DNA from: Lepidodermella squamata
Taxonomy: Eukaryota; Animalia; Gastrotricha
Assembly (NCBI GenBank): GCA_047495785.1
Contig: JBLDXI010000001.1
Coordinates: 1,240,001-1,304,000, forward strand
Direction of reading: 5' to 3'
DNA: 64,000 nucleotides
Numbering within the stretch: position 1 is the stretch's first letter; every line of letters starts with the position of its first letter. Shown here one piece after another: positions 41,444 to 63,082 of the stretch. The translations under genes were made by a program, and so were the position numbers. Below the pieces are notes generated by a model. It was not told where the DNA came from, searched no databases, and worked only from the letters and a program-made list of their open reading frames with translations.

Positions 41444-44400
41444 TCAATCTCGCAGTATCTGGGTGGTGCTAAGATCCGCCTCTTTGCAGTAGAACATCGA
41501 CATGAGAGGAGACGAGACCGCTTGATTTTGCAGCCAGTAAGTCGGAGATCCATCCTTAAGATAGTCAAAACATTCATCGTAATATTAAATAATGTAAATT
41601 TAAGTTTAATGTAAATTTTTAAACTTGCCGGCCACTCTCGTCGCTGTCAGCGTGAAACGGGCCCTAATAACTTGTCCCTTCGAAAATCGATAGAAGGTTT
41701 GCTACTACAGTATAATGCGTATGGATTAAAGTGTGTAACTTTTTGATGAATGGTGAATGGTCATCCCGTCCGAAGAAGATGGAAACCGCGCGGTGCTCCG
41801 TGAATGTTGAGAATTTACGCCTTCGATCCTCTCCTTTAAAATGCTGACCAGCAACACTCCATTCTTGATTGGGAGTTTTATTCATCACAGCTTCTTTTAA
41901 TCACAAAACGCGGCAATAGGAAGGCATCAAGCATCAAGCATAAGTCCAAAGAGTGAAATGCATCCAAACATTTGAGGCGGTCATATAAGAGTGACAACGT
42001 CGCAGTGATCATGGAAAGGGAACTGTAGATGGCGTGGAAATGAGGCGTGGCTCAAACTTAGCGACTGTAGCATCTGAGTGTAGAAAACTCGATGGATTAA
42101 AGCTATCGCTCAGGTTTTAGCTGAAGCTAAGCCTCCGGATCGATATTCGGAGCGAACTCTCACTACTATTCAGTCTATTCTCATTGTTGATCTTTGAACT
42201 ACTCATCATCGGTCTGCGATTTTGAGACACCTTCGCTACCGAGCTTTTGTCGCTCAAGCAAATAAACGATAATTTAGAGGAGCCGCGTCAGATATGAGGG
42301 AGGAAGGTAATGAATTAAGTTAACACCCCTTTCAGTTCCGCAGCGACGTATCTTCGGTCGCTGAGTCATGATAAAACCTCCTTGATGCTGTAGCTCATTG
42401 AAGCTCGATGCGCTCAGCTGAATTTGTTGAGCTGTTGAAAACATAATTATCAACGTTAAATGAAGCATTTCAAAACCTACGTCGAGAAGTTTGCTCCATA
42501 CGATTGGCTGAAATGGAAAAATCAAGTGGCTAATTGTTTTATCTGTCAAGACAATACCATGCTGAACGGTGTTTCCGAACAAGCAGTAGCGGAATGTTTT
42601 AAACCCGACGATACCCGCCATCACAGGGCCGCTGTTGAGGCCAACTCGAATACGAATTCGGTCTTTGCTCCGCGGAACTTTGATCATTGTGACCTCTTCA
42701 ATCAAAGCCAAAGCCAAAGAAGCGATTTCGACGGCATGGGACGGCAGTCGATTAGGAACTCCGCTGGCTACAACGTAAGCATCTCCGATGGTTTCTACCT
42801 TATAGCACTGATAGGCGTTGGCTCGGTTATCAAAAGTTGTGTAAACGGTGTTAAGCAGAGCCAACACTTCTTGAGCTTTCAGTTTCGAACAAATCGTCGT
42901 GAAGCCGACGATGTCCGAATAGAAAACAGTGACGTTGTTGAAGTACTCAGGGCGGACTTGAACGCCTCGGTTCAGTTGTTTTGCGACGCTTTTCGGCAGG
43001 AGGCGGTAAACGGCCTTGCACGAGTCGACATAACGATCGGCACAGTAATTGTATCGATTGATTATTCGGGAAGATTCCTGGCTCGTATGCAGCAGCCAAA
43101 TCGTTATGAACACCGGCAAAAGTAACCCGAGTATTGCCAGTTTCACCCCCTCTACAAAACTTGGTTTTTAAGCCCCAATGTAGCGTAGTGAAAATTATAC
43201 CGGAGATAACAGCCTCGTTGACTGCTTGAAGCCCCATGTCGTAAGTTGCGTCCATGTAGTCTTTACTATCGTCAGCATACTTTAGCAACGAACGATGAAG
43301 ACCAGCTGCATTTCTAGTCATCTCGTCTGAAAAAGCATTGAGATTTATTAATTCTTAATACAGTAGGAATCAAAAGATTACATCTGTCGTCTTTTGTAAC
43401 CAGCCAATGGGCCTTGGTTGCATTTTGCACTCGCAAGACATCGTTGAGAAGTTTAGCAATGCCATCAGTTATGTCACTTCCATCGATATCTCCAACTGTC
43501 AGCAGGTCAGCCTTCTCCAACAGAATACCAGCGACAGATAGCGAGTCTTCCATGAGCTGAGCATCCGATGAACGAAGAAAACTCGCCTTTGTATTGTCAT
43601 CAGAAACTACAGGAAAAAGTTATTTCTCGACTGCGAAGTTTTCAAGGAGTTTTTACTTAGATCTCGAGTCGCATAGGCGTAGAGAGTAGCAATTTGAAAG
43701 TAAATGATGCTTTTGCGCGCTAGTAAGAAGCCAAGGGTTGATAGCCACAGCGTATTGAAGCTGTCCTCTTTCGAGAAAATTTGAATTTCGACATCGGAGA
43801 TCTGAACCAAGATGCACTCGTAGAAAATGATATCGTCGAAAACTGTCATGCATAATTTGTCATATTAGCGTGTGATGCGATCTTCGTAGTGTCTTACCGT
43901 TGATAGCTCTTTCATCATATGCTCGGTAGATTTTTATAGGCATCGCACTGTCCCTGGTGGCCAAATCAGACCTGATACCATTGCTTTGGCATATGTACTC
44001 CCTGTATTCGGGTACGTCAAAATAGATACGGTTGAAAACGTTTGACCATTTTGAGAAAATCTTGGAAGAATTCATGATTCATTCGCGAAACATTTTCAAT
44101 GCGATTTAATACCTGATCATTTAAACTAACAGCATCCCCAATTTTAGCATAATCATTCGGGTCGTAATTGTTAGTCATATACTTGACCCTTGCCAACGAC
44201 TCTTCAAATACAGCCGCTGACATTTCCTCCAGCGCCTCGAAGCCTATAAAAGTGTTACCCATGTCCTCGTAAGTGCCTCGCTCGTCGAGTTTTCTCTGCA
44301 AGATGATTGCGCTCCTGACGATGCTGCACACGATCAGGATGACTAAACCGGCTGCCATGCCGCCGAGCAAAGATCCCGATTTGCTGGTCAGCGTCAGTGA

Positions 44401-44484
44401 CGCTGATTCTGCTTCGGCGTCAAAAATGTCGACGGAGGAGCGTCCGGAATCACCAGACTTGAGGCTACTACCACTGGTTTTCAT
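41444..44484 (-). CDS. 2-TM NIT-like-sensor guanylyl cyclase family protein GC-1 (penultimate exon interrupted by an insertion; possible pseudogene)
   Basis: MKTSGSS...; TM1, ~250-aa helical ectodomain, TM2, YRLLPKSVAKQL helix, FYSDIVGFT / KVETIGDAY / RYCLFG; last exon DGSPTYWLQN. Confidence 0.8.
41640..42350. mobile_element. 711-bp insertion in a GC-1 exon
   Basis: Removing 41640-42350 restores cga ccg aag aga gag tgg ccg (RPKREWP), matching paralogs RPKxEWP; short inverted ends gtcgctg...cagcgac. Confidence 0.7.
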
Positions 44485-45805
44485 TGTCTGTGCACTTATT
44501 GGTAAAAGCTGTCGAAAAAATATCTCCCAGGTAATAATACTATGTCCTTCGGAGAATAATGCGTTATTATGGATTATCCTTCGAAATTTCATTAATCATG
44601 ACTTAGGCTTATGTGGTTAGGCTGCTGATGAGTGATTAGCAAACAAACAGGATTGGCTAGGATGAAATTTCAATCATCCCGTAGTACCTATGTCAGGACG
44701 ATTTTCCAGGAAAATACCGAGTACAACATGCACCAAGCTGGTGCAGAGGCATGAAGATCTGGTTGAATCTAAAAAATGGGTCTGTGGTCTGCCAGGGTCT
44801 GGTTACCTGAGCTGTATTATATTGGAATAAAACGATCTTGCAATTGTTCAGGATGATGCCAAATTGATCCCAGACGCCCAGACGGGGAATTGGTAACTTG
44901 AATGTTTCATTAGATATCAATAAAGCTCATTGCTAAGGATTCTGGTAGAACCAGAACAACCAGCCAATGAAAAGCAAAATCTTCAGTTCCGCGGCACGTA
45001 TCGCGGATATCTCATGGAGTGGTATGGTATTGCCTCGGCAAAGTCGCTTTTCAGCAAAACAAAATTGGCAAAAATATTGAAATGGCAGGCAATAAATGGT
45101 TGAATGTGTTACTTACCACACCTTTTTATTCACAGGCACAACAAACCACCTGCTACTCAGGGGAAGCTACGTAGTACATTGAAGCTGACAGCTAAAAGTA
45201 GACCACACATAAGCGATATTAAAAACAGCAACAAATATTAGTCATATGAAACAATGATTATATATTGAATAGATATTGAATAGATAGATATTGAAACGAT
45301 AACATGAAGATTTGACACAGATTCACATATAATTATTGAAAACGCCATCAAAATCGGTGAAAACACACACTGTACAATAGCGCTGAGACTTAGTGCAGGT
45401 TATATCGTGCTCAGCGCGTCATAACTGAAATTTACAGATGTAGAGCGCGCGGGCGCGCAAATCTCAATCTTTATCACTTGTGTCCCATGAAAGTTGCAAG
45501 AGCATCACAGCGCAGCCACTCTCAACTCCAGAAATCGCTTGATATAACAGAAAATATGATTGCTGTTGCTGGAAATCGTTGGCAAAATTATCTGTCTCCT
45601 TATTATTCAAACTACAAATCGCTTTCGTTTTAGATTCGCGATTTCTTCCCCTTGGCTGCGCTATGATTCATTTTACTGTAATAACATACACCTTATTCAC
45701 ATGAATTTGACTATTACAATTACTATTACCACATCAACATTTCAAAGTCATAGAGAAATCAGTAAAATCCAGATAGATAACAGCCGTCGAGTGAGGCGCA
45801 GCCGG

Positions 45806-48125
45806 TTAAGTTCGAATGATTTGCGTTAGGCTGAAGTCTTTGCAGTAAAACATCGACAGCAACGTCGTTGATATTGCGTGGTTTTGCAGCCAATGAGTTG
45901 GGTTGCCATCCTTAATTACAGAAAATAAAGAAATGTAAAATTAATAGTTTGGTTTTTTAAGATAGTTACCGGCCAGTCTTTTTTAGGGCGCTGAGATGTT
46001 ATGAAACCGCCTTGTTGTTGCAATTCGCTGCAGCTCGACGCGCTCAACTGAATCTGCTGGGCTGTAAAAGAAAATTTGTTCGAAATTCGCTATTACGAAA
46101 TCATCAAAGAAAACCAACGCTGCGAAGATTGCTCCATTCGATTAGCTGCAAATGGAACAATATTTAGCTGTAACATCAAATCAACTATCAACTGTACTGA
46201 CCATGTTGAACAGTGTTTCCAAACAGGCAGTATCGGAATGTTTTGAAACCAACTATCCCAGCCATGACAGGTCCCGTGTTGATGCCGACACGAATACGGA
46301 TGCGTTCTGTGCTTCTAGGGACCTTGATCATCGCAACCTCATCAACCAAAGCCAGAGCCAGAGAGGCGATTTCAATAGCGTGAGATGTGATTCTATTAGG
46401 AACTCCGCTGGCTACAACGTATGCATCTCCGATGGTTTCAACCTTATAGCACTGATAGGTGTTTGCTCGATTATCAAAGGTTGTGTAAACGGTGTTAAGC
46501 AGGGCCAACACTTCTTGGGCTTTCAGCTTGGAGCAAATAGTCGTGAAGCCGACGATGTCCGAATAGAATACAGTGACGTTGTTGAAGTATTCAGGGCGGA
46601 CTTGAACGCCTCGATTCAGTTGCTTTGCGACGCTTTTCGGCAGGAGGCGGTAAACGGCCTTACAAGAGTCTATATAGCGTTCTACGCAGTGATTGTACCG
46701 ATTGATCAGCCGGCTTGTTTCCCTTTTTGAATGTTTCAACCAGATGATTGTGAATATCGGCAGAAGAAAGGCAAAAATTGCCAGTTTTACGGCCTCTGTG
46801 AGAGTCAATTTAATGTCGCCGGAATGATTAAACTACCTTTCTAACCTGAGACTATTAAACCATTCACGTTGTCCAAGCCTTTTTGGTAGTTGGTGTCCAT
46901 GTAGTCCTCACAGTCGGCCGCAAAAATATGAAGCAGGCGGCGAAGGTTCGTCGCGGTTCGCGTCAATTCATCTGAAAAGGAGGGTTTTTGTCGCAGCCGT
47001 GAGCTTGAGATAACTTACATCTTCCTTGATCCTTGCTAACCATCCAATAAGCTTTTGTAGCATTTTGGACACGGAGTACGTCATTGAGTAAGATATCGAT
47101 GCCTTCACGAACTTCCTTCGAAGCCGCGCCGAGCTCAAGAGGAGTCAAAAGATCGGCTTTCTCGAGTAAGATACTGGCAACAGAAAGTGAATCTTCCATT
47201 AGCTGGGAATCAGAGAAGCGCGCGAAATCTGCTTTGGTACCGTCTTGAGATACTATAAGCAAAACAAAGTTTAGTGTGACCAAATTGTAAAGGATGAACT
47301 TACTAAGGGCTCGAGTTGCGTAAGCGTAGAGAATCGCGATTTGAAAGTAAATGATACTTTTTCGAGCCAACAAAAATCCGAGGGAGGCCAGCCACAAAGA
47401 GTTAAAACTGTCCTCCTGCGCGAAGATTTGAATCTCAACATCAGAGATCTGCACAAGGACGCATTCATAGAAAGCGATATCGTCGAAAACTGAAGGAATA
47501 TGGAGTAAGTCAAATCGGAATTGGATTACAAAAGTTTACCATTAATGCTTCTTTCGTCATACGCTCGATAGATCTTTATCGGCATAGCACTGTCGCGTGT
47601 AGCTAAATCAGATCTAATGCCATTACTTTGGCATGTGTATTCGCGGTACTCCGGCACGTCGAAGTAAATTCGATTGAAAACCGTAGACCATTTGTAGAAA
47701 ACCTTAGGGTATTTTACAAGTAAAGGGCAGTTATTGGACTCAATGGGTTATACCTGGTCGTTCATTGTTACAGCATCCCCGATTTCAGCGTAGTTATTTG
47801 GATTAAACTGGTTTGTCATGTATTTGACCCGAGCAAGAGCTTCTTCGAAAACTGCGGCTGACATGGCTTCCAAGGCATCGAAGCCTTCGAAAATATCGCC
47901 CATGTCGTCGTATGTTCCACGCTCGTCAATCGTTTGCTGCAGCATCACGGCGCTCCTGATGATACCGCACAAGAGCAAAATAACCAAAGCGGCTGAAATA
48001 CTGGCAACCAGCGTTCGTGACCGGCTGTTGAGGGTGAGGCTGGCTGCCTCAGCTTCAGCGTCGAAAATGTCTACCGAAGACCGCCCGGAATCTCCCGACT
48101 TGATGCTGTTCGAGTTGGCTCGCAT
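45806..48125 (-). CDS. 2-TM NIT-like-sensor guanylyl cyclase family protein GC-2 (9 exons)
   Basis: MRANSNS...; exon series homologous to GC-1; ends DGNPTHWL...QIIRT*. Confidence 0.88.
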
Positions 48126-48623
48126 CTTTGGAAAATGAAACTCAACTGAAATTTGTAATGTCTTGCTAATTAGTAGATGGATTTTCTCTCATCGCGTCAA
48201 CGAAGCGTTAATTATCTGCGGGTTTGCACCTGATTGTCAGTTCGATAGGATAATTCGGCTATAATCTTACAGCACCGAAATCTCATACAAAATGTTTAAC
48301 AAATAGCTCGGACTTGCGTCTCCCAACTCCACATCTCATCTTCTTTGAGAGAAAACGTTTTCCGTTGTTTGCCATCATAAAACCTTCACAAAGCCAACAT
48401 TCAAATGATTGCAAAAGTTTTTTACTCGATGAGCCTTATTTGAAAATGAAAGCACAGTGTCGTTGATGATTTGGGACAAGATCAGCGCAAATTAAAAAGG
48501 AAAGAACTCTAGTTTTGCCGCGTTAGCGACGATGTATATACGAGATGCACGGACATGAACCGATAATTGTAAACAACGATCAATAATTCATTGTGTCACG
48601 TGAGTAAATAACTAGAATAACTT

Positions 48624-50942
48624 TTATCCCCGTGTGATTTGAGTAGAAATTGCAGTTTCTTTCCAGGCGCAGAAAAGCGATAGAAACTGGGAGCATGTCG
48701 CTCTATTGGTCAACCAGTACGTGGGGAGTCCATCCTAAATGTCAAATTGAGAACTTCTCATGAGAAAACACCAAGAGTAAGCGTACCGGCCACTCGCATT
48801 TTGGACGCTCAGTCATCATGAACCCACCAATTCGAATCAGCTCTCGATAGGAAGAAAGACTAACCTGAATTTTTTGCGCTGTTGGATGAATTATTGTAGT
48901 AGCCACCCAAATAATAGTGAAACAACTTACGTTCGGCCGTTTGCTCCATACGATTAGCTGCAAAGTCATTTATCAAAACACTTTTAGATGCGGTTAAATA
49001 ACTAACCAGTTTGGACTGTATTTCCGAAAAGGCAGTAGCGGAAAGTCTTGAACCCAACAATACCCGCCATTACAGGGCCACTGTTGATTCCAACTCTTAT
49101 TCGAATCCGGTCTTTGCTGCGGGGAACTTTGATCAAGCCGACCTCTTCGATAAGAACCAGAGCTAATGAAGCAATTTCGCCAGCATGCGTTGTTGACCGA
49201 TTCGGAACTCCACTTGCTACAACATATGCATCGCCGATGGTCTCCACCTTGTAACATTGGAAGGAATTCGTTCGACTGTCGAAAATTGAGTAAATTGTGT
49301 TTAGCAGGCTCAGGACGTCCTGAGCTTTCATTTTCGCGCAGGTCGACGTGAATCCGACAATGTCAGAGTGGAAAATCGTGACGTTGTTGAAGTACTCGGG
49401 ACGAACTTGAACGCCTCGGTTCAGCTGCTTGGCGATGGTTTTCGGCAAGAGTCGATAGATAGCTCGGCATGAATCCATGTAACGCTCAATGCAGAAGTCG
49501 TAACGGTCAAGAAGCCGTTTAGCCTCTCTGCCGGTATGAAGCAGCCATATCGTGCTGAGCCAAGGCAGTAGAACACCGATGATAGCCAGCTTGACGCCCT
49601 CTTCATAAATTCTTTAAATAAATAACTTAAGACTTTTAGAGCTGCAATTACCTGAAATTATTGAGTTCAAGGCGTCGGCCACGGCGTCATCATATGAGCT
49701 CATCATAAAATCCATATATTCCGATAATATGCCTTGAAGGTCCGAGCTGATAGCAGAAACAATGCGATTCACATCGTCTGAATGAAGAACGAATGAAGAA
49801 ATCCTCGTCCTAAAAAATTCCCACTTACATGCTGAGCTTTTTGTCGCAACGACATAAGCTTTTGTAGCGTTCGGAATTACAGATGCCTGGTTTACAAGCT
49901 CCTTGATAGATGCTGAAACTATTGGCGATCTCGCGCCGACGAAATTCGGCGTAATCGTGAAAGCTTTGTCAAGAAGCATTGTTGCCAGGGCCATCGATTC
50001 TTCCATTACATTTGCGTCTGAAGGCCTAGTAAAAGCTGCTGAACTCGAAGTAACTTGAGAAATTCGAAATTATCGACAAGCAGCCAAAGGAATAAACCTG
50101 TACCTAAGGACCTTGTTGCATAGGCGTAGAAAATGCCTTGTTGGAAACTTAGAATGCCTCTTTGCGCTAGTAAATAAGCTAGAGCAGCTTGCCACAGCAC
50201 ATCCAAACCAGTCCCACCGGCAAGAATTTGAATTTCGGTATCATGAAGGACATTCATCAAGCATTCGAAGAACGCAATGTCATCAAAAACTGAAAAGTAA
50301 AGACTGTTTAATATCGCGATATGTCGATGTTAGCAAAATTTACCATTTAGTGTTCTTTCGTCAAATGCTCGATACGAACGAACCGACATGGCTTCGTCAC
50401 GAGAAGCAAGATTGGATTTAATCCTCGCAAGTGAACATTTATATTCTCTGTACTCCGGAGCAGTGAAGACGAGATCGCTGAAGATGTTGTAATATCGATA
50501 GAAGACCTGTTGGAAGATTGCAATTAATTTGAATGAATTGTAGATAAATTCACTTCACCTCATCGCTCCCAGTAACTGCCTCGCCCATCGCAACATAATC
50601 GCTGGGATTGTAATTTCCAGTTATATACTTGACCCTGGCGAACGATTCAGCGCTGTTTCCCGTAATCAGCGCCGTTAATGCTTCAAATTTTGTGAACACG
50701 CTGCGAGCCTCTCGAAGTTTATCCAGATCGTCAACTGATTTAGACAGAACAACAGCGCTTCTTACGATACCGCAAAGGATGACAACGCCGATTGAGAAGG
50801 CTGCGGCAATCAGCAAAGGCTTGGCTCGATTTGCTAGCTTTAGTGATGCGGCTTCAGTTTCAATCTCCTTAAAGGTATCGCCAGATGCCAGAGAAATTCC
50901 AGATCGCTGGCTTCCACTTCGAACGCTGACATCTCGGCGCAT
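48624..50942 (-). CDS. 2-TM NIT-like-sensor guanylyl cyclase family protein GC-3 (9 exons)
   Basis: MRRDVSVRSG...; class III cyclase motifs; ends DGLPTYWL...QITRG*. Confidence 0.88.
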
Positions 50943-51283
50943 AATTACGAATAGCTAATAAAACACCTAGTTATAGACAAATACCAGAACCTGAAATTGA
51001 GAGAATATCAATGAAGTGAAGATAATGGCAATAGATAACATGCATTACAACATAGGTATTATGTAAGGTGAAAATTACCTGCAGATCTTAGAATGTGTTT
51101 CATACTTGAAAAGATTTCTTATCATTGAGTTACACACAAAACATATTATAAGCTGCACCGCGTGTTGGCTGCTTGTTTGTAAAGCTTACGTTATTTTAGA
51201 TGACCAAAAAACCGGCTTATGCCGCGCTGCTGACGATGTTCCTGATACCTAATAACGTGCGATTATATGTCCCTCGTTTTCGA

Positions 51284-53569
51284 TCAGATCCGCGAGACTT
51301 CTGTGAGAGTGTAATCGAGTCCGGCGCTGCAAAACAGTGACAGAAAAGGAGAGTTGGTGGACTTGTTCCTCAGCCAATAAGTAGGCACACCCTCCTATCC
51401 GAAGGTAAGTGAAAATACTTGAGAAGGTATGGCAAAGATGAAATACTTACAGGCCACTCGTTTTTAGGCCGTTCCTGCAGTATAAACCCACCTAAACGAC
51501 TGAGCTCGCGATACGACGACAGGCTGACTTGAATTTTCTGCGGCTGCGATGTCTGCTCCATGCGATTTGCTAGCATTTTATACAATTTTACGAAAGTGTA
51601 GTTATAGTTGAAAATATACCATTTTGAACTGTATTTCCGAAAAGGCAGTAGCGGAAAGTCTTGAACCCAACAATACCCGCCATTACAGGGCCACTGTTGA
51701 TTCCAACTCTTATTCGAATCCGGTCTTTGCTGCGGGGAACTTTGATCAAGCCGACCTCTTCGATAAGAACCAGAGCTAATGAAGCAATTTCGCCAGCATG
51801 CGTTGTTGACCGATTCGGAACTCCACTTGCTACAACATATGCATCGCCGATGGTCTCCACCTTGTAACATTGGATGGAATTCGTTCGACTGTCGAAAATT
51901 GAGTAAATTGTGTTTAGCAGGCTCAGGACGTCCTGAGCTTTCATTTTCGCGCAGGTCGACGTGAATCCGACAATGTCAGAGTGGAAAATCGTGACGTTGT
52001 TGAAGTACTCGGGACGAACTTGAACGCCTCGGTTCAGCTGCTTGGCGATGGTTTTCGGCAAGAGTCGATAGATAGCTCGGCATGAATCCATGTAACGCTC
52101 AATGCAGAAGTCGTAACGGTCAAGAAGCCGTTTAGCCTCTCTGCCGGTATGAATCAGCCATATCGTGCTGAGCCAAGGCAGAAGAATGCCGATGATAGCT
52201 AATTTAATCCCCTCTTGAAATCAATTCACATGAAAGAAATCTCAAAATTGGAAAAGCAAAAAACCTGCTATTATTGAGTTCAAGGCGTCGGATACGGCAC
52301 CATAATATGAGCTCATCATAAAATCCATATATTCCGATAATATTCCTTGAAGGTCCGAACTGATAGCAGAAACAATACGGTTGACGTCGTCTGAAAAAAT
52401 CGAACAATCAGGTTTTCTTTATGAACATTTCCAGATATTAACATGCTGAGCCTTTAGTCACAACGACATAAGCTTTGGTAGCATTTGGTATTACAGATGC
52501 CTGATTTACAAGCTCTTTGATAGTCGCTGAAACCAGTGGCGTTCTCGCGCCGACATAGTTCGGCGTTATCGTGTAAGCTTTGTCAAGAAGCATTGTAGCG
52601 AGGGCCATCGATTCTTCCATTACGTTCGCGTCTTTAGGTCTTGAAAAAGCTGCCGATCGTTGTGTCACTTGAAAAATTTGATATTATAGAATATTACATA
52701 GCCGTATCGCGATGGCCTACCTAAAGATCTTGTCGCATAAGCATAAAGGATGCCTTGCTGAAAACTTAAAATGCCTCTTTGCGCGAGTAAATAAGCAAGA
52801 GCAGCTTGCCACAGCCCGTCCAACCCTGTCCCACCGGCGAGAATTTGAATTTCGGTGTCATGAACGACATTCATCAAGCATTCGAAGAACGCAATGTCAT
52901 CGAAAACTAAAAATATAGCACTCATAGCTATATAATACGCTTGTAGTCTGTCGATTTTGGCAAATTTACCATTCAGAGTTCTCTCATTGATTGCTCGATA
53001 CGATCGGGCTGACACAGCTTCGCTTCGAGATGCAATATTTGATTTAATTCTCGCAAGAGAACATTTGTATTCTCTGTACTCCGGAGCGGTGAAGATGATA
53101 TTGTTGAAAACATCGAAATATCCAGCGGTAATCTGTTGTCGGAAGATATTATAATTTAAATGAATAGTAGTTACATTCATTTCACCTGATCCCTCGCAGC
53201 AACCGCCTCGCCCATCGCAACGTAATCACTTGGATTGTAATTTCCAGTCATATACTTGACCCTCGCGAGCGATTCAGCACTGTTTCCGTTGATAAGCGCC
53301 GTTAAAGCTTCAAATTTTAAGAACACACTGCGAGCCTCTCGAAGTTTATCCAGATCGTCCACTGCTTTAGACAGAACGACAACGCTTCTGATGATTCCGC
53401 AAAGAATAACAACGCCGATTGAGCAGGCTGCGGCGATAAGCAAAGGCTTGGCGCGATTTGTTAGCTTTAGTGATGCGGCCTCAGTTTCGATCTCTTTAAA
53501 GGTGTCGCCAGATGCTAGAGAAATTCCCGATCGCTGGCTTCCACTTCGAACGCTGACATCTCGGTGCAT
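51284..53569 (-). CDS. 2-TM NIT-like-sensor guanylyl cyclase family protein GC-4 (8 exons)
   Basis: MHRDVSVRSG...; ends EGVPTYWL...EVSRI*. Confidence 0.88.
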
Positions 53570-54071
53570 GTTTTCCAACAATGAGATGCAAGTTATCAAC
53601 CTCAAGAAGTTATTTAATCACCTAGTAAGGCAGATAATTGGCATTGAATATGCATTCTCGGCTACCCGACAAGAGATGATTAAAGAACGAGAATTTCCTC
53701 ACCGTATTGTGACAGAATTATGGATATATGACAATAAGCTTTATACAAAATTATCAGTAGACTAATTATTAGTAGATACTATTTGGCAATTTGGAAAGAA
53801 ATCTGAATACCTATTGGAGATTGGGCGAGAGGCAATAAATAACAATTAAAAATTACTATTTGGGGTAAATTTACATGCAGTTGTTTTCGGACTTTAGTTT
53901 CTAGTTTTCATGTCACTATACAGCAAAGCTGCCCTGTATATTGGATGACTGATTTAAACCTCACCGTATTTTAGATTAATTCAGCAAATAATCGTGTTAT
54001 GCCGCGCTGCTGACGATGTCCCAATAATACTTTATCAACGTGCGATCATATCTCTTATACATAGTTGTCAA

Positions 54072-56431
54072 TCAAATCCGCGAAACTTCTGTGAGTGTAT
54101 AGTCGATCCCTGCGCTACAGAACAGTGACAAGAAAGGAGAGCTAGTGGACTTGTTCCTCAACCAATAGGTTGGAATACCGTCCTATCGAAAGTTTGCTTT
54201 GGAGAATTAATAAGATATAAACTGAACAATGACTTACGGGCCACTCGTTTTGAGGCCGTTCCTGCAGTATAAACCCACCTAAGCGATTGAGCTCGCGATA
54301 CGACGATAGGCTGACTTGAATTTTCTGTGGCTGCGAGGTCTGCTCCATGCGATTAGCTATTTTTTCAACTAATTTACGGAATTATAATTCAAGCTGGAAT
54401 GATACCGTATTGAACTGTGTTGCCGAAGAGGCAGTAGCGGAATGTTTTGAAGCCAACAATACCCGCCATTACAGGGCCGCTGTTAATGCCGACTCGAATG
54501 CGTATCTTATCCTTGCCCCGAGGCACCTTGATCATTCCAACCTCCTCAATCAAGACAAGAGCCAACGATGCGATTTCGATGGCATGAGCCGAAATGCGAT
54601 TAGGCACTCCACTTGCTACGACATACGCATCTCCTATCGTTTCCACCTTATAGCATTGGAAAGAATTAGTTCGATTGTCAAACGTCGAATAGATTTGGTT
54701 GAGCAGGCCCAGCACGTCTTGAGCTCTCAATTTCGAACAAATTGACGTGAACCCAACTATGTCCGAGTAGAAAACCGTGACGTTGTTGTAATACTCAGGG
54801 CGGACCTGAACGCCCCTATTTAGCTGCTTGGCGATGCTTTTCGGCAAAAGGCGATATATGGCTCTGCAAGAATCCATGTACCGTTCAACACAAAAATCGT
54901 AGCGACTGAGGAGTCGCTTGGCCTCCCCAGCAGTATGCAGAAGCCAAACAACGCAGAGCCATGGCAGCACAATTCCAAATATAGCCAATTTGATACCCTC
55001 TGAAACACCTTTTGAATCTTTTTGAAAGTAAAAGTTTGCTTACCTGTGATGACGGTGTTGTAGGCTGAAATGAGAAAGCCATCGTATGAATCCAACATTA
55101 ATTTCGAAAAATCGCGGCTAATTTTGTCCAGCTGACGACTTAATTGGGCACTGACTAGTGACTGCTCGTCTGAAGTGATGCATTATTGTTATCGATGTTT
55201 TAATTTCAAATGCAAATATTACAAGTTTGTCCCTGAACAACTAGAACGTATGCTTTAGTCGCATTAGTAGTCGCTGCTGCTTGATAGCTTAGTTCTCTGA
55301 TTGCTGCAACCGTTTTTTGAGCTTCAATGGCAATATTTCTTGGTAATAAAAGGCTGGCTCTCTCTAGCAATATTGCGGCCAGATTCAGAGAGTCTTCCAT
55401 TTGCAAGGCATCAATGCTCCTCTCGAAATTCCCCGCGTTGGTTCTCACTTAAAATCCGAAAAATTCATCCGTTTAGCATTTTTTTAAAGTTAACAAACCG
55501 AGATTGCGATAGGCGTAAGCATATAGAATAGCTTGTTGGTAATTGACGGAAGCTCTTTGAGCCAGAAGATAGGCGACAGATGCGCTCCAAATGGGGTCCA
55601 ATCCTGTCCCACTCGAGAGAATCTGAAGCTCCGTGTCGAGAATTACGAGAACGATACATTGGTAAAACTCGATGTCTTGAAACACTTTTAGAGAACAAAT
55701 TAAGACGGATTCCTTTAATCATAATAAATTCGAAGAAAATAACCCATTAAGATATAGCTAAAAGGATAAAACGGCTAGTGAAAGGGGGCTATATTCGTAT
55801 CCTTCCGTGTAGGTAGAATAAATAGTTACATACCTTTAAGTGTACGCTCCTCGTAAGCTCGGTAGGCTCGAATCGAGAGCGCTTCGGGCCGCGTTTGCAG
55901 ATTAGACTTGACGCGGACCAGTGAGCATTTATACGTTCGATATTCCGGAGCCGTGAAGTAAATTTTCGATAACACGTCGAAATGTTTATTGAATACCTGA
56001 AAACCAGCTTGTTTCGAACAGTTCACTGATTATAAAAAATTGAAACATACTACGTCGTTCAAAGTGACAGCCTCTCCGATAGCTACGTAATCGCTCGGGT
56101 TGTAGTTATTTGTCATATACCGGACCCTAGCAAACGATTCCAATATGGTGGCATCAGCTAGATCGGTAAGAGCCTTGAATGCGTCAAAATTGTCGTAGGC
56201 ATCTTGAAGACTCTCAATATCCTCCACAGATTTGGACAAAATTATGGCATTTCGCAGAATTCCGCAGATCATCACTACGGTTAGCGAACAGCCAAGTGCA
56301 ATCAGCAAAGGCTTCGATCTATTAGTCAGAACTAGTGTTTTTGCCTCCATTTCGACTTCTTTGAACGTATCGCCCGACGCCAACGACCTGCCGGATTGTT
56401 GGCTGGCACTTCTACTGACAGCGCGAGACAT
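54072..56431 (-). CDS. 2-TM NIT-like-sensor guanylyl cyclase family protein GC-5 (8 exons)
   Basis: MSRAVSRSAS...; class III cyclase motifs; ends EVSRI*. Confidence 0.88.
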
Positions 56432-57164
56432 TTTCAGAAAATGTTGTAGGTACAAGGTCTCCTGAAAATGGATGTGTAGTCAGACAGACTGATCTGGGAT
56501 TGAGTTAATTTATAGTCATTTTACAATAATCCTCCTTATTTGGAAAATTGAACTTTTAGCCTAATCACGTGAATCATATAAATGCGACTCGCATAGATTA
56601 TTTCAGTGCGAAAAAACAATGGAGAGCTCAAGAAAATTTGATAAATGTAGGCATGAGATTAACGTCGCCGTTCTTTCAACTATATCTGACGATCGAATGG
56701 ACATTGGACATGGTATCAAACTTTATGACTCATATTATGACTTAGACCTTCAGAGGGAGACGCGTTGTTGCGATGTGCTAATTCACTTGTGCATATTTTT
56801 GCTTTCGTCGATTTTCACTTCGGGTTAACTCTTGTCAAGTTGATGAATAGACACAATATCGAAAACAAACCATTCGTGGCAGACGTAATCTGCTGGCAAC
56901 TCTCACCAGCTGTGGCTCGACAACTGGGTCGATTTTTTTGTCTGGAAGGGGGATGCAATATCTTTTGAACCTTGAAAAGGTAGACATGTCGTGTGATTCA
57001 ACCGTGAGAACATTGAGATAAGGTCGTCCGTTGGTGCGATAACCAATTTCCGACATACAGCTGCTAGTTCGCAAGATGCAATTTACCGGTGTATAACAGA
57101 TAAAATGTCTGAGAAACTCGACCGATGGCCTCGTTTACTGATGACAAGATGCAGCTGTCGCGGC

Positions 57165-57171
57165 TATAAAA
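57165..57171 (+). promoter_or_regulatory. TATA box of the lipase gene
   Basis: TATAAAA ~60 nt upstream of ATG 57230, in GC-rich flanks. Confidence 0.5.
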
Positions 57172-57229
57172 GCAGCCTAATTTGAGGCCAATATTGTATA
57201 ATATCGAAGCTTACTGAAACCTTGAAATC

Positions 57230-58341
57230 ATGAGTTCATTTAGTCTTCTTTCTGCCGTTTTGCTGCTTGCAGCTGGTACTGCCCACGCAGGCAAGGTGTG
57301 CTACGAAAAAGTTGGATGTTTCAACAACAGCTCTCCCTTCAACCACTTGCCGCTACCTAAAGATCCGTACACACAGATTCCACCGATTTACTATTTGCAC
57401 CGAAATGGACAACCTCTCGTTACGATCACCGATGGGTAAATTCTAGTGAAATCTTCATGTATATGCAAATTATGTGTCTCTGTAACAGAAAATCATTGGC
57501 CAAGGATGTTTTCGTGCTTGTTCATGGCTTCACCGAGTCGTACAACGTTTCGTACCCAGCTTGGCAAAAGGATATGATTGAGCGTCTGTGGCAGGTCAAA
57601 CCTCTGGCCGATGTCATTGTCCTTAGCTGGGAAAAGGGCGCCGCGGCTATTCAGGGCCTTTCCGTCTACAACCAAGCTGCCTCGAACACTCGCACCATTG
57701 GCGCTGCTCTTGGCGTTTTATTCAACGAGGACGGCAAAGAGGATCACTCGACTTACCATTGCATCGGATTTTCTCTTGGCTCTCATGTTTGCGGCTTCGC
57801 TGGTAAAACAATGATCAATAAATTCGGCCGAATTTCCGCCTTGGACCCAGCTGCGCCTGGTTTCAGCACCCTGAAAAATCTGGAAGCCCGCGTTGCTGTT
57901 GGCGATGCTGATTTCGTCGATGTTATCCACACCTCCAAATTGGGTAAATTCCGATACTTATATCTTTGTCTATCCATTAAACAAGCTATCTATTGAACAG
58001 GTATCTATTTCCCGGTCGGAGACAGTGATTTCTGGATGAATAATATCAAGCAACAACCCGGCTGTTATGACAATATTTCAGGCTTCGGAGATCTAGTCAG
58101 CGCTGTCACATCTTGCAGCCACGTTCGGGCAACTCATTTTTACACTGAATCCATCAACCCTGCGCCTGGTTGTAGTTTCCTCTACTGCCCATGTGAGACG
58201 TGGTCATTGCTCGACAAAGGCCAATGCCTCACTTGCGACGCCCATCTAAGCGCGGAGCTGGGCTACAGATCTATCCTGTCATCGGCTCGAGGTGAATTTT
58301 ACGGAAAAACCACTAGCCAGGCACCCTATTGCTTGCAGTAA
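57230..58341 (+). CDS. Secreted pancreatic-lipase-family protein (catalytic domain only), 3 exons
   Basis: Exons 57230-57435, 57489-57943, 58001-58341; signal peptide; VCYEKVGCF; VHGF; nucleophile GFSLG; LDPAAP; DVIHT; QPGC...CSHVRA. Confidence 0.92.
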
Positions 58342-59356
58342 GTAACTGAATTGTTAAAAAAGGAAAGCTGAATTCATATGTATGACTTGAATGACTTAGG
58401 AGTAGGAAGAGCTTAGCCGAAATCTTGTCAAATAAATGCATATTAAAATCGACAACATTTAATATTGGACTTGAAAAGATCTTGCGACGGCTATCAGTTG
58501 ATTTTCTAATTGCTTAAATAGCAACAAGAATTGGTGAACACCACATTATTAACCCCGTCGGAATTTGGCCAAAATTCAGAGATTAGGTAACGTGAAAAAA
58601 CGTTTTATTGTTCATCCATTCTCTCACAGTAACCGCCTCACTTGATTCGTTGTCATTCGTAGTCATATGCTTGATACTCGCGACTCACGAGCGATTCAGC
58701 ATTCAGCAGCGTTTCCGTCAATCAGGGGTGCCAGAGCTTCGAATTTGTTGTCCTCGCGTCGTGAAGTCTCCTGGGTCTTCTGCAACTAACAACTTGATAG
58801 AGAACGATTTTGAAAGGGTCAATAACGCTGATCGAACAGTCAGAGCTCTGAGAATGGGGCTACAGTATCAATGTCTTGGATCGCTGATTATCACCATGGG
58901 AACGTTCATATCTCGGCGCTTAGCGACGATGATGTGATAAGCGATTTTAGGTCATCTCAAAATTATTAATTAGCACCTATTAATGTAAATGAGTAGCACA
59001 GATTTTCCAAAAACCGATCATCGGAGTGGCATGCCGGACATGCAGAACTAAAAATATGCATGGTGCATATTCAGACCAGGATTGTAAACAGATATTGCAT
59101 ATTATTATATAACGGTTGAAAGTTACCCAAAGTTCACCTCAGAAAGCATTAGAAGGGAGAGCAAGCACACATCATTTTAGGCATGATATAATTGTGCGAG
59201 CAACCCTGTGAGCTGGAGTGAATAACTATATGCCCGAACTTGCAGAACTGCAGATAAACTAGCGACAAGATTATTTGTTATGCCGCGCTGCCGGCGATGT
59301 CTCCCTAAATGCTTAATCTAGGAGCGATTGTATCTTCTCTTATCCCTCATTTTCGA

Positions 59357-62300
59357 TCACATCCGCGAGACTTCTGTGAGCGTATAATCAATCGTGGCGC
59401 TGCAGAATAGCGACAGGAAAGGAGAATTGGTGGACTTGTTTCTCAGCCAATAAGTTGGCATGCCATCCTATGGAAGGTTAGTCGAGAATATTGGGAAGGA
59501 ACGGCAATGATGAAAAGCTTACAGGCCACTCGTTTTTGGGCCGTTCCTGTAGTATAAATCCGCCCAGTCGATTGAGCTCGCGAAAGGACGACAGGCTGAC
59601 TTGAATTTTCTGTGGTTGCGAGGTCTGTTCCATGCGATTAGCTATCATTCAGTCACGTTATACGAAAATATACGAAAATGGCTATTAAATATTAAATCAG
59701 CAAAAATACCGTATTGAACAGTGTTGCCGAAGAGGCAGTAGCGGAATGTTTTGAAGCCAACGATACCCGCCATAACTGGGCCGCTGTTGATGCCGACTCG
59801 GATGCGTATCTTGTCCTTGCTCCGTGGCACCTTGATCATTCCAACCTCCTCAATCAAAACAAGAGCCAACGAAGCTATTTCGATAGCATGACCCGTAATG
59901 CGATTAGGCACTCCACTTGCTACGACATACGCATCTCCTATCGTCTCAACCTTATAGCACTGGAAAGCATTCGTTCGATTGTCAAACGTCGAGTAGATTT
60001 GGTTGAGGAGGCCAAGCACGTCTTGAGCTCTCAATTTCGAGCAGATTGACGTGAACCCAACTATGTCGGAGTAGAAAATCGTGACGTTGTTGTAGTACTC
60101 AGGGCGGACCTGAACGCCCCTATTAAGCTGCTTCGCGATGCTTTTCGGCAAAAGGCGATATATTGCTCTGCAAGAATCCATGTAACGCTCGACGCAAATA
60201 TCGTAGCGATCAAGGAGTCTTGTAGCTTCCTTAGTAGTATGCACGACCCAAACAATGCATAGCCATGGTAAGACTAGACCAAATATAGCCAGTTTGATTC
60301 CCTCTGAAATAAAATTTACGGGACAATTGAACATTCGTATCACGTATCAAGAATGTTGATGATGACAGAGCCTTTCAATTGTTTTTTCGCGCTTTGAACA
60401 ATGAAAAACGCTCATTCGAGAATTACAGGTAACGAAATCATACAAGTTGTTCAATCGGGTTACCTGTGACGACGGTGTTGTAGGCTGAGTTCAGGGCGTC
60501 ATCGAATGAGTCCAACATGACGCTTTTGTAATAGCGGGTAATTTTCTTCAACTGCTTTGTTATTTGAATACTAACAATGGACTGCTCGTCTGCGATGAAT
60601 AACTAGTTTTAAAAGGTGCTCATGCGTAAATGTCTTACATGTTTGTCCCCGAGATACAAGCAAAAAAGCTTTCGTGGCATTAGGGATCGCATCCGATTGA
60701 TCTATTAGCCCTTGTATTGCTGCAATTGCCTCGTCAGTTCCATCAGCAGAATTGCTTGGTAACAATAGACTTGATTTTTCCAGTAGCATAGCAGCCAAAT
60801 TCAGGGAATCTTCCATTTGCAAAGCGTCAGTTTTCCGCTCGAAATTCGCATTATTTGACCTCACTGTTATTGCAAAACAGGGTAAAACAGTGGCGAATGT
60901 TTGCTAAATGGGGGTAACTATATGGCCTTCAGCCGTCAGCCTACTATTCGAAGTATAGCTGTCCTATTCTAGCAAACCCATGCACATCTGATCCACCACA
61001 AAGCAACGAACTCCCTGATGCCCCAGATATTGCTCAATCGTCGCATTTACACGAGCTACTTCGTAATTATCGATGTTAATTACTTCGGTTGTTGCGTCAA
61101 CATTTTTACTTTAACTCAAACGAGCGCTGTTTTTATTTTTGTGAGAAATTTTTGCGGGCGCTGTTAACAACTCTCTGCAGGGCGGTTTAAAACTCAAATT
61201 TTGCGGTATAAAGTAATCGCAATTTCGCGATCACATCGTCGGCTGGCACGTAATCTAAACAATTCTCCTGCTGGTGAATAGAAATGATCGATTTCGTGAT
61301 TATAGAAATTCTTATATGTTGCCAAAATCCTTCTAAACTGAATTCTGCAACGAATCGCGTCACTGCGGCAGTTTCAAGCCACCCTATATTCTATATTGCA
61401 GTACGGAAAATACTTCAGCAAATTCAAAAATCTGAAAATGTCGATAGGCTCGAGGTATTTTTCATGACTCTCGAGCGATTCCGAGTATTAGAGTGTTGTA
61501 GTCCTAATAGCCCCAATTTTTAAAATTAATGGCCTAATGTTGATGTGAGACAATTAATCCTAAAATAAGACACTAACAACACAATTTCTTAAATTTTCAA
61601 CCGCAATTTAGACTTATCAAATTTCGATTTTGAATTTTATTTTTCAAAAGTTTTCTCACTCCTTTTTCTCGGAGAAAATTATCAAAATAGTTGAATAATT
61701 TTCACAGCAACCTAAAAGCAAGGTACTAGGCACCCATAGGCCTCAATCGAGCTAATTTTGAGGTTTTTCTCCAAGAGCCATACTCGCTCCGTAGCTAAAT
61801 CTTTCGAATTTGTGGATAAAACAAAGCATTCAGCCTTTAGTGAAAATGATTGCGCAACTGTGAAAGTAATTAACATTGATAATTATGGGTAGTCTAGTGT
61901 AAATGGGACGAATTATTATTCCATTGTGTTTGAGGTTGTAAGTTGAAAAAAATCCGCACGCTGATTGGTCAGTTGGCTCGTATCCATGACTCCGCCTTGC
62001 TACTTGATCGTGCGATCTATATAATTTGTGGCTTTTATTATGTTTATGAAGGCCGTATCGTAGCACGCGTTTCCAACAAATGCGTAAAACCATTCATAAA
62101 AAGATATTTTTTGCAAACATTTTATGGATCGCACGATCAAGTAGCAAGGCGGAGTCATGGATACGAGCCAACTGACCAATCAGCGTGCGGATTTTTTTCA
62201 ACTTACAACCTCAAACACAATGTCAGTATTTTTGATTACCGAGAGCGCGCGAGGCGTATGCTGTTAGCACTGCTTGTTGGTAATTGATCGCAGCCCTTTG

Positions 62301-63082
62301 AGCCAGCAGATAAGCAACTGTAGCACCCCAGATGCTGTCCAATCCTGTTGCGCTCGAAAGTATCTGAAGCTCAGTGTCCAGAATAACGAGAATGCTGCAT
62401 TTTAAAAACTCAATGTCGTCGAAAACTGTTGACGCAATATGGGAAATAGCTAATGTGAAATTCTAACGAAATGTATGATACCATTTAATGATCGCTCGTC
62501 AAAAGCTCGATAAGCGCGTAGGGATAGCGCTTCAGGTCGAGAAGCTAAATTCGACCGGATTCGTGCCACGGAACATATGTACGTTCGATACTCCGGGGCT
62601 GCGAAGTAAATTTTCGTCAGTACATCGTAATGTCTGTTGAATACCTAGAAGGAGTTATTGAAGAATCCATCATCATCAACAATATTATAGTGATAACTCA
62701 CGACATCATTCATCTTGACAGCCTCTCCCAGAGAAACGTAATCACTAGGGTTGTAGTTATTAGTCATATACCTGACCCTGGCAAACGATTCTGAAATAGC
62801 CGTATCAGCCAAATCTGTCAATGCCTCGAATGCATCAAAATCGTCATTTGTATCTTGAAGAGTTTGAATCTCTTGGGCTGCGTTGGACAAAATTATGGAA
62901 CTGCGCAAAATCCCGCAGATAATGACTACGGTTAGCGAGCACGCGAGTGCAATTAGAAACGGCTTGGCTTTGTTAGTCAGAACTAGCGACTTTGCCTCCA
63001 TCTCCACTTCCTTGAATGTATCGCCGGATGCCAAAGACAAGCCGGATTGTTGGCTGCCACTTCGACTTACAGCTCGAGACAT
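59357..63082 (-). CDS. 2-TM NIT-like-sensor guanylyl cyclase family protein GC-6 (8 exons, intron 3 ~1.37 kb)
   Basis: MSRAVSRSGS...; all exons homologous to GC-5 present with GT-AG borders; ends EVSRM*. Confidence 0.85.
61922..62222. mobile_element. 301-bp MITE/foldback element with 96-bp perfect inverted arms
   Basis: 61922-62017 is the exact reverse complement of 62127-62222; TC on both outer sides; lies in intron 3 of GC-6. Confidence 0.85.

What the first reader, a model, noticed from the sequence alone, without database searches (positions are those of the whole stretch)
41444..63082. Array of six kinase-less two-TM cyclase receptors with a degenerate NIT-like ectodomain: candidate new sensory receptor family
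Seen: each gene encodes a Ser-rich N-tail, TM1, a ~250-aa helical domain with a conserved NAT sequon and conserved Cys, TM2, a short signalling helix and a class III cyclase. There is no kinase-homology, ANF-receptor or H-NOX domain. Known: this layout is that of NIT-domain guanylyl cyclases reported in some invertebrates (e.g. Platynereis, placozoans), and NIT (PF08376) binds nitrate/nitrite through conserved Glu-Arg motifs. Inference from by-eye alignment: the NIT pattern is recognisable (L...E...RVKYMT ~ LQxERGxSxxYL; EAVxxND ~ QRxxTD; AYLLAQR...QQ ~ AYxxLxxAKExxGxERA), but the ER positions read ES/EA and QQ/QI in all six. The ectodomains fall into three diverged pairs (1/2, 3/4, 5/6) while the cyclase domain is nearly invariant, as expected for a receptor repertoire sensing ligands other than nitrate.
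Basis: partly seen in the sequence, partly recalled or inferred. Interest (0 to 1): 0.85.

Follow-up and report, generated by a model that had tools for sequence, protein, structure and literature searches.

The report
Six divergent NIT-like receptor guanylyl cyclases
The window holds a tandem array of six intact genes for two-pass membrane receptors that join a helical outside sensor, a very distant relative of the nitrate/nitric-oxide-sensing NIT domain, to a guanylyl cyclase with two altered catalytic residues. This is a strongly diverged branch of a known animal receptor type, not a wholly new one.

Summary
Six minus-strand paralogues (632-636 aa, 8-9 exons, ~50-nt introns) lie exactly at 41444-63082. 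Each has a Ser-rich tail, TM1, a ~300-aa all-helical ectodomain with one conserved NAT sequon and two conserved Cys, TM2, a ~40-aa linker helix and a class III cyclase. None has a kinase-homology, ANF or H-NOX part.

- **For NIT:** once five metagenomic relatives are added, profile-profile comparison with animal NIT-GC sensors gives 88% probability over 205 collinear columns (reversed controls 0.2-0.3%).
- **Binding motifs:** the first NIT Arg is replaced (E-S/A), but an invariant Arg sits one turn on. Loss of the second Arg depends on the alignment.
- **Cyclase:** it keeps the metal, base-specifying (E/C) and Arg residues. The transition-state Asn is Gln and the KGKG Lys is missing.
- **Cyclase conservation:** its near-invariance is partly gene conversion (g3/g4: 1 mismatch in 526 nt).

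First-stage notes flag similar NIT-like cyclases elsewhere in this genome. Verdict: new variant of a known kind, moderate interest.

The parts
41444..44484 (-). g1, 636 aa, 9 exons. Receptor cyclase, pair 1. Its 3' end is atypical: a 770-nt last intron, a weak GTTAAC donor and a 5-residue insertion before the last exon.
45806..48125 (-). g2, 632 aa, 9 exons. Receptor cyclase, pair 1.
   Evidence: tree
48624..50942 (-). g3, 635 aa, 9 exons. Receptor cyclase, pair 2. Like g1 and g2 it has an extra intron inside ANRMEQT..|PQKIQ.
51284..53569 (-). g4, 635 aa, 8 exons. Receptor cyclase, pair 2. It is a mosaic: the 5' part is g3-like, while exons 7-8 and intron 6 are g5/g6-like.
54072..56431 (-). 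g5, 634 aa, 8 exons. Receptor cyclase, pair 3. Key residues with first codon base: E98 (56140), R102 (56128), C151 (55927), C191 (55658), R241 (55508), N305 of NAT (55265), D440, E480, D484, C550, Q557 at the catalytic Asn position (54412), R561, and P598 at the KGKG Lys position (54240).
59357..63082 (-). g6, 634 aa, 8 exons. Receptor cyclase, pair 3. Intron 3 is 1376 nt and carries an inverted repeat.
51628..52153 (-). Gene-conversion tract in exon 6 of g4. It has 1 mismatch in 526 nt against g3 (49015-49540). The first 60 nt of the exon and both flanking introns are diverged.
49015..49540 (-). Partner of the gene-conversion tract, in exon 6 of g3.

Best explanation
The six genes are functional paralogues of a lineage-specific, strongly diverged subfamily of NIT-type membrane guanylyl cyclases.

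Inferred topology: the Ser-rich tail is cytosolic, the ~300-aa eight-helix sensor lies outside the cell, and the last sensor helix runs into TM2. A ~40-aa linker helix then joins TM2 to the cyclase. The two conserved Cys probably form a disulfide between sensor helices 3 and 4, and the sensor carries one N-glycan.

Inferred mechanism, by analogy with NIT-GC1, NarX/NarQ and chemoreceptors: the protein acts as a dimer. A small ligand binds the sensor, and the movement passes through helix 8 and TM2 to the cyclase dimer, which makes cGMP. The E/C specificity pair and both metal Asp are intact, which fits cGMP synthesis. Turnover is probably lowered or changed, because the transition-state Asn is Gln and the phosphate-binding Lys is missing.

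The ligand site has been remodelled (E-R became E-S/A...R), so the ligand may or may not still be a nitrogen oxyanion or an NO product.

The array grew by tandem duplication into three sensor types. Gene conversion homogenises the cyclase exon.

Shown here: gene structures, domain order, residue states, remote homology, purifying selection and gene conversion. Inferred: topology, dimerisation, ligand class and activity.
For: - Gene models and domain order.
- Pfam Guanylate_cyc on exon 6, E 6e-43.
- Canonical D, D, E, R, C and R residues.
- Bona fide NIT-GCs with the same length and layout are among the nearest full-length cyclase hits (Pfam NIT E 1e-8 to 1e-29).
- hhalign of the 11-member ectodomain family against 15 NIT-GC sensors gives Prob 87.9%, P 3.2e-6 and 205 collinear columns. 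Reversed controls score 14-16.
- Language-model neighbours of a relative's sensor: the C-terminal half is nearest to NIT clusters (58 of 100 hits, score 0.92), and the N-terminal half to TorS/4HB_MCP/TarH/CHASE3 sensors (0.92-0.96).
- dN/dS is 0.14-0.16 in the ectodomain and 0.05-0.14 in the cyclase, and all six reading frames are intact.
- Literature: NIT-GCs are widespread and expanded in animals. Platynereis NIT-GC1 makes cGMP in response to an NO donor only when its NIT domain is present (PMC7400543; 10.1101/2023.08.02.551600).
Against: - Pfam NIT gives no hit, even at E<=10, on contiguous pieces of up to 223 aa.
- An HMM built from animal NIT-GC sensors scores the full spliced proteins at best E 0.011.
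- With the six window sequences alone, hhalign gives only 13%.
- The cyclase tree puts the family on a long separate stem (1.3 changes per site), not inside the main NIT-GC clade. Joining them is not rejected, however (AU p 0.25).
- There is no expression or splice evidence.
- The catalytic Asn and Lys are replaced.
Confidence: 0.55

Rival explanations
1. The six proteins are pseudo-cyclases or regulatory subunits. They keep a sensor and a cyclase-fold dimerisation module but make little or no cGMP themselves. They would signal by pairing with other cyclase paralogues or by binding nucleotide.
For: - The transition-state Asn is Gln in all six window proteins and Leu in all five metagenomic relatives. 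One relative has also lost the transition-state Arg.
- The conserved Lys of the KGKG strand is Pro or absent.
- Unchecked first-stage notes report many other NIT-like cyclases with half-sites in this genome.
Against: - Both metal Asp, the E/C guanine pair and the Arg of RYCLFG are invariant.
- The cyclase domain is under the strongest constraint in the protein (dN/dS 0.05-0.14).
- Asn to Gln is a conservative change. From general knowledge of mammalian adenylyl cyclase, mutating the equivalent Asn or Lys lowers activity but does not abolish it.
Confidence: 0.25
2. The ectodomain does not descend from NIT. It is another four-helix-bundle sensor (TarH, 4HB_MCP, CHASE3 or TorS-like, or a lineage invention) fused to a guanylyl cyclase, and the NIT signal reflects convergent helical patterns.
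For: - Pfam NIT is negative.
- The N-terminal half has TorS/4HB_MCP/TarH as its nearest language-model neighbours.
- The half-domain model matches generic four-helix bundles and not NasR, although the same test finds NasR for a true NIT-GC.
- The cyclase is not nested in the NIT-GC clade.
Against: - The profile match is collinear over seven helices and 205 columns, and it vanishes when one partner is reversed.
- Motif spacing agrees between the two families: E..Y at +7, FY..W..AY, and the N-x-T sequon before the last helix.
- Length and placement between two TM helices are identical to NIT-GCs.
- The C-terminal half is nearest to NIT clusters by language-model features.
Confidence: 0.15
3. The array is decaying: some or all copies are unexpressed pseudogenes.
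For: - There is no RNA evidence.
- g1 has an atypical 3' end, with a 770-nt intron and a weak donor.
Against: - All six have open frames across 8-9 exons with conserved phases and GT-AG sites.
- dN/dS is well below 1 although dS is saturated between pairs.
Confidence: 0.03

Closest known systems
Animal NIT-domain guanylyl cyclases (NIT-GCs; Trichoplax, Platynereis NIT-GC1/2, molluscs, hemichordates)
   Same: - Length of about 600-650 aa.
- Same order: N-tail, TM, ~250-300-aa helical sensor, TM, linker helix, class III cyclase with E/C specificity.
- No kinase-homology domain.
- Lineage-specific tandem expansions.
- An N-x-T sequon before the last sensor helix.
- Remote profile homology of the sensor.
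   Different: - The sensor fails Pfam NIT.
- The helix-1 ER motif is E-S/A with an Arg at +4.
- The helix-5 KE..G.ER motif is unrecognisable.
- Two extra conserved Cys are present.
- The cyclase sits on a separate long branch, with Asn to Gln and the KGKG Lys lost.
- The HNOBA-type linker match of NIT-GCs was not seen here.
NasR NIT domain (PDB 4AKK) and bacterial NIT sensors (PF08376)
   Same: An all-helical sensor of similar size built from four-helix bundles. The Glu of the helix-1 motif is kept.
   Different: There is no sequence-level or specific structural match. The proposed nitrate-binding Arg of helix 1 is replaced.
Receptor guanylyl cyclases of the ANP-receptor / retinal type, and soluble guanylyl cyclases
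   Same: The catalytic domain, the E/C specificity pair and the dimeric class III fold.
   Different: There is no ANF-receptor ectodomain, kinase-homology domain or H-NOX/HNOBA sensor. There are two TM helices instead of one or none.
Bacterial four-helix-bundle periplasmic sensors (Tar/Tsr, PcaY_PP, NarX/NarQ, TorS)
   Different: The sensor here is twice as long (eight helices), occurs in an animal, and outputs through a cyclase rather than a kinase or a methyl-accepting module.

Membership tests
NIT domain (Pfam PF08376) | Match to the Pfam NIT model at or above its gathering score | tested here: not met
   No NIT hit at E<=10 on any exon or on contiguous pieces of up to 223 aa from the window and its relatives. 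The full spliced ectodomain has no reference and could not be submitted. As a substitute, an HMM built from NIT-GC sensors scored the full spliced proteins at best E 0.011.
NIT domain (Pfam PF08376) | Detectable homology to known NIT sensors by profile-profile comparison | tested here: met
   hhalign of the 11-sequence family against 15 NIT-GC sensors gives Prob 87.9%, P 3.2e-6 and 205 collinear columns. Reversed controls give Prob 0.2-0.3%. With fewer family members the probability was 13% and 54%.
NIT domain (Pfam PF08376) | Two tandem four-helix bundles with a specific structural match to NasR (4AKK) | tested here: inconclusive
NIT domain (Pfam PF08376) | Conserved Glu-Arg pairs on helix 1 and helix 5 (the proposed nitrate pocket) | tested here: not met
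   On helix 1 the E is kept but the R is S, A or G in all 11 family members, with an invariant R at E+4. On helix 5 an ungapped reading gives Q/QI, while the HH alignment places ER on the Arg of YAxx[T/Y/S]R after a 7-residue insertion; this is unresolved.
Animal NIT-GC receptor cyclases | Architecture of TM, helical sensor, TM, linker helix and cyclase, without a kinase-homology, ANF or H-NOX domain | tested here: met
Animal NIT-GC receptor cyclases | Cyclase domain groups with the NIT-GC clade | tested here: inconclusive
   The window proteins and the relatives form a fully supported clade on a long stem, unresolved against the NIT-GC, kinase-type and H-NOX-type cyclases. Constraining it with the NIT-GCs is not rejected (AU p 0.25).
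Animal NIT-GC receptor cyclases | cGMP production dependent on NO, nitrite or nitrate and requiring the sensor | not testable with these tools
   This needs a cell assay of the kind used for Platynereis NIT-GC1.
Class III guanylyl cyclase catalytic domain (PF00211) | Pfam match, two metal-binding Asp, the Glu/Cys guanine-specifying pair and the transition-state Arg | tested here: met
   PF00211 E 6e-43. In g5 the residues are D440, D484, E480, C550 and R561, and they are invariant in all six.
Class III guanylyl cyclase catalytic domain (PF00211) | Transition-state Asn (TVN) and the Lys of the KGKG strand | tested here: not met
   The Asn position is Gln in 6 of 6 window proteins and Leu in 5 of 5 relatives, against Asn in 16/16 kinase-type and 13/18 NIT-GC cyclases. 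The Lys position is Pro (5 of 6) or Gly (g1), against Lys in 16/16 and 13/18.
ANP-receptor-type and soluble guanylyl cyclases | ANF-receptor ectodomain plus kinase-homology domain, or an H-NOX domain | tested here: not met
   No such Pfam hits were found, and a 634-aa protein leaves no room for them.

The most novel reading that the evidence does not exclude
The family is a receptor class in its own right, found in an under-sampled animal lineage. An ancestral NIT sensor has been rebuilt, with a relocated Arg, a new disulfide and three sensor types in one array, to recognise ligands other than nitrogen oxides. The cyclase has become an attenuated or non-catalytic module, with Asn replaced by Gln or Leu and the Lys lost. 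It would signal by pairing with the many other half-site cyclases noted elsewhere in the genome. That would make a combinatorial sensor-cyclase system invisible to domain databases.
Probability: 0.15. Interest if true: 0.7.

Novelty: new variant of a known kind. Interest (0 to 1): 0.45.

Why it matters
NIT-type cyclases are a recently recognised route for NO, nitrite and nitrate signalling in animals, and only one has been tested biochemically. This array shows that members can drift beyond the reach of Pfam, so surveys that report lineages as lacking NIT-GCs may undercount them.

It also offers natural variants at the proposed anion-binding Arg and at two catalytic residues. Together with three sensor types on one conserved output module, these variants allow direct tests of what the NIT pocket binds and how much the Asn and Lys matter in guanylyl cyclases.

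The nearest relatives occur only on unlabelled eukaryotic contigs in metagenomes. The host lineage is therefore poorly sampled.

Tried and rejected
- **RNA support for the splice sites.** The single run found is DNA: depth is even over introns and there are no splice joints.
- **The window's own proteins in the databases.** They are absent. The best hits are 56-59% identical fragments from metagenome assemblies.
- **Full spliced proteins.** They have no reference, so they were not typed into Pfam, AlphaFold or the database searches. Exon references, in-frame read-through pieces and relatives were used instead.
- **Relatives of the sensor.** A word-based search with the sensor half of P0002 found only P0002 itself.
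- **Window sensor HMM against 150 cyclase hits.** Nothing was significant.
- **Sensor profile against PDB sequences.** No hit at E<=10.
- **A contiguous full ectodomain in any relative.** None exists: intron 2 is present in every gene examined.
- **First fragment alignment for AlphaFold.** MAFFT stacked exons 4 and 5 on each other, so alignment A1 was discarded.
- **Language-model search on a window piece read through an in-frame intron.** It gave noise, score 0.77.
- **Organism identity.** The best named hits of a neighbouring MAM-domain gene are echinoderm proteins at 26-29% identity, with a 47% hit on a metagenome contig. This shows an animal of a poorly sampled lineage and nothing more precise. 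A literature search for the metagenome sample code found nothing.
- **Positive selection.** The idea that the sensors evolve under pervasive positive selection is rejected (dN/dS 0.14-0.16).
Full report
**What is there.** All six frames were translated and the exons joined at GT-AG sites that keep frame and are shared by the paralogues. This gives six complete genes on the minus strand.
- The proteins are 632-636 aa long.
- Exons 2-6 have identical lengths in nearly all copies (163, 186, 225, 126 and 594 nt), and intron phases are conserved.
- Introns are 44-68 nt except four: 149 nt in g5, 160 and 1376 nt in g6, and 770 nt in g1.
- g1-g3 carry one extra intron inside the codons for ANRMEQT..PQ.
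- A lipase-like gene on the plus strand (57230-58341) lies between g5 and g6.
- The one public run holding this DNA covers introns and intergenic DNA evenly and shows no splice joints. It is therefore a DNA run, and the splice sites remain inferred.

**Domain order.** Every protein has the following parts:
- a Ser-rich N-tail;
- a hydrophobic helix at about residues 41-62;
- a stretch of about 300 residues, read here as helical because its relative models as helices;
- a second hydrophobic helix at about 360-382;
- about 25-40 residues of linker;
- a class III cyclase domain and a short tail.

Pfam sees only Guanylate_cyc (E 6e-43), on exon 6. The stretch between the membrane helices holds one conserved sequon (NAT, residues 302-306) and two conserved Cys (in PEYR.Y.C and F[YF].C). 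This fits an extracellular location with the cyclase in the cytosol. There is no room and no signal for a kinase-homology, ANF-receptor or H-NOX domain.

**Relatives.** A full HMMER scan of 1.8 billion representative proteins with exon 6 gave no near-identical protein.
- The best matches (56-59% identity) are fragments from metagenome assemblies (P0002, P0003).
- Ordinary guanylyl cyclases follow at 45-52% identity. Among them are proteins of the same length and layout with clear Pfam NIT domains, E 1e-8 to 1e-29.
- The window's own proteins are not in the 5.8-billion-protein collection.
- The metagenome contigs (L001-L008) are eukaryotic and carry at least five paralogues of the same family. 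These are often in tandem and lie next to ankyrin-repeat and EF-hand genes.
- Their sensors share the window's motifs: E.x.R[VLA]KY, PEYR.Y.C, [FW].D..[FY]Y.C, W...[AS]Y, YA...R.L and NATKA.

The family thus exists outside this genome but is very thinly sampled. A neighbouring MAM-domain gene has its best named hits in echinoderms at only 26-29% identity, and a 47% hit on another metagenome contig. The host is an animal of a poorly represented lineage, and I could not place it further.

**Is the sensor a NIT domain?** Four tests bear on this.
- **Sequence tests are negative.** Pfam NIT finds nothing at E<=10 on any exon or on contiguous pieces of up to 223 aa. A sensor profile finds nothing in PDB sequences. 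An HMM built from animal NIT-GC sensors scores the full spliced proteins at best E 0.011.
- **Profile-profile comparison is positive, and improves as the family alignment deepens.** With the six window sequences the probability is 13% over 46 columns. With eight sequences it is 54%. With eleven it is 87.9%, P 3.2e-6, score 48.8, over 205 collinear columns covering helices 1-7. Reversing either partner drops the score to 14-16.
- **Motif spacing agrees**. The Glu of helix 1 and a Tyr seven residues later match. So do the [TS]D of helix 2, the FY...W...AY run of helices 4-5, and an N-x-T sequon ahead of the last helix (NMT in NIT-GCs, NAT here).
- **Language-model neighbours point the same way.** The C-terminal half of a relative's sensor is nearest to NIT clusters (58 of 100 hits, score 0.92). 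The N-terminal half is nearest to TorS, 4HB_MCP, TarH and CHASE3 sensors.

**Fold test.** No gene in the window or its relatives has the whole ectodomain in one open frame, because intron 2 is always present. Spliced sequences have no reference, so the full domain could not be modelled.
- I modelled helices 4-8 plus TM2 of one metagenomic relative (pLDDT 73, pTM 0.63). Residues 28-180 form an up-down four-helix bundle whose last helix leads into TM2.
- Foldseek found nothing significant.

The test therefore has power, and the family, at least its most aberrant member, lacks the specific NIT signature. My reading is that the sensor is probably a very diverged NIT descendant (about 70-75%). It fails the family's operational definition, so 'degenerate NIT-like' is a fair label.

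**The binding motifs.** In NasR the proposed nitrate pocket uses Glu-Arg pairs on helices 1 and 5.
- **Helix 1.** However, an Arg four residues later (E-S-F-A-R) is invariant. That is about one helical turn on and roughly on the same face.
- **Helix 5.** The profile alignment instead puts the NIT 'ER' on the Arg of YAxx[T/Y/S]R, which is conserved in 10 of 11 members, after a seven-residue insertion. One relative also has an Arg at the position of the window's first Gln.

Loss of both Arg is therefore not established. Only a full model can tell whether R102 and R241 (g5 numbering) meet in a pocket.

**The cyclase.** Both metal-binding Asp, the Glu/Cys pair that specifies guanine, the Arg of RYCLFG and the transition-state Arg are invariant. 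Two residues are not canonical.
- The transition-state Asn is Gln in all six window proteins and Leu in all five relatives. It is Asn in 16/16 kinase-type and 13/18 NIT-type cyclases in my set.
- The Lys of the KGKG strand is Pro (Gly in g1), or the strand is deleted.

An unchecked first-stage note on this same stretch says the same, and I confirm it. On a tree of cyclase domains, the window proteins and the relatives form a fully supported clade on a long stem (1.3 changes per site). That clade is unresolved against NIT-type, kinase-type and H-NOX-type cyclases. Forcing it together with the NIT-GCs is not rejected (AU p 0.25). The output is most likely cGMP at altered or lowered rate. A non-catalytic, partner-dependent role is a serious rival.

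**Evolution of the array.**
- Ectodomain identity is 74%, 85% and 68% within the three pairs and 39-49% between them. Cyclase identity is 88-96% and 79-89%.
- Where dS is not saturated, dN/dS is 0.14-0.16 for the sensor and 0.05-0.14 for the cyclase. Both are under purifying selection, and there is no sign of pervasive positive selection.
- Part of the cyclase similarity is concerted evolution. g3 and g4 differ at 1 of 526 nt in exon 6 (g4 51628-52153, g3 49015-49540). The first 60 nt of that exon has 10 differences, and the flanking introns are diverged.
- g4 is a mosaic. Its exons 7-8 and intron 6 resemble g5/g6 (77-84% nt) and not its sister g3 (36-55%). Like g5/g6, it lacks the extra intron.

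**Comparison with what is known.** NIT-domain guanylyl cyclases were described in placozoans and many other phyla, with lineage-specific expansions (PMC7400543). Platynereis has 15, and its NIT-GC1 makes cGMP in response to an NO donor only if the NIT domain is present (10.1101/2023.08.02.551600). The window's genes share that architecture and probably that ancestry. They differ in four ways:
- the sensor is beyond Pfam's reach;
- the helix-1 motif is remodelled;
- there are two extra conserved Cys;
- the catalytic Asn and Lys are changed.

This is a new variant of a known kind. First-stage notes, unchecked, list further NIT-like cyclases elsewhere in this genome, so the scan has met this theme before.

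**Verdict.** Interest is moderate (0.45).

Noticed in passing
window 57230-58341 (+): A lipase-like gene interrupts the cyclase array between g5 and g6, on the opposite strand. It has several exons and a GFSLGSH motif of the GxSxG serine-hydrolase type.
   Followed up: no
window 61922-62030 and 62114-62222: An inverted repeat with 109-nt arms, 96% complementary and 83 nt apart, lies inside the unusually long (1376 nt) intron 3 of g6. It looks like a small transposon insertion.
   Followed up: partly
window 41555-42324 (g1 last intron) and 42325-42431: g1 alone has a 770-nt last intron, a weak GTTAAC donor and a 5-residue insertion (IRRCGTERG in place of K.WP) before the final exon. Its 3' end may be rearranged.
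   Followed up: partly
window 51284-51394, 54072-54182, 59357-59467 (last exons of g4-g6): g4, g5 and g6 end in -VSRI or -VSRM, which fits a class I PDZ-ligand pattern (S/T-x-hydrophobic). g1-g3 end in -LRD, -IRT and -TRG, which do not.
   Followed up: no
window 2026-8104 (+): A very large MAM plus LDL-receptor-class-A repeat gene with single exons of up to 698 aa. Its best match is a 47% identical protein on a metagenome contig, and the best named hits are echinoderm proteins at 26-29%.
   Followed up: partly
L003 8014-9454; L001 4120-4626; L005 6507-7001: In the metagenomic relatives the cyclase genes lie next to ankyrin-repeat genes, and in L001 and L003 also next to EF-hand (calmodulin-like) genes. 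This echoes an unchecked first-stage note of an ankyrin plus NIT-cyclase cassette elsewhere in this genome.
   Followed up: no
window 42481-42507, 46119-46145, 48931-48957: A 27-nt micro-exon is created in g1-g3 by an extra intron that g4-g6 lack. Its distribution cuts across the g3/g4 sister pair, in line with the g5/g6-like 3' end of g4.
   Followed up: yes
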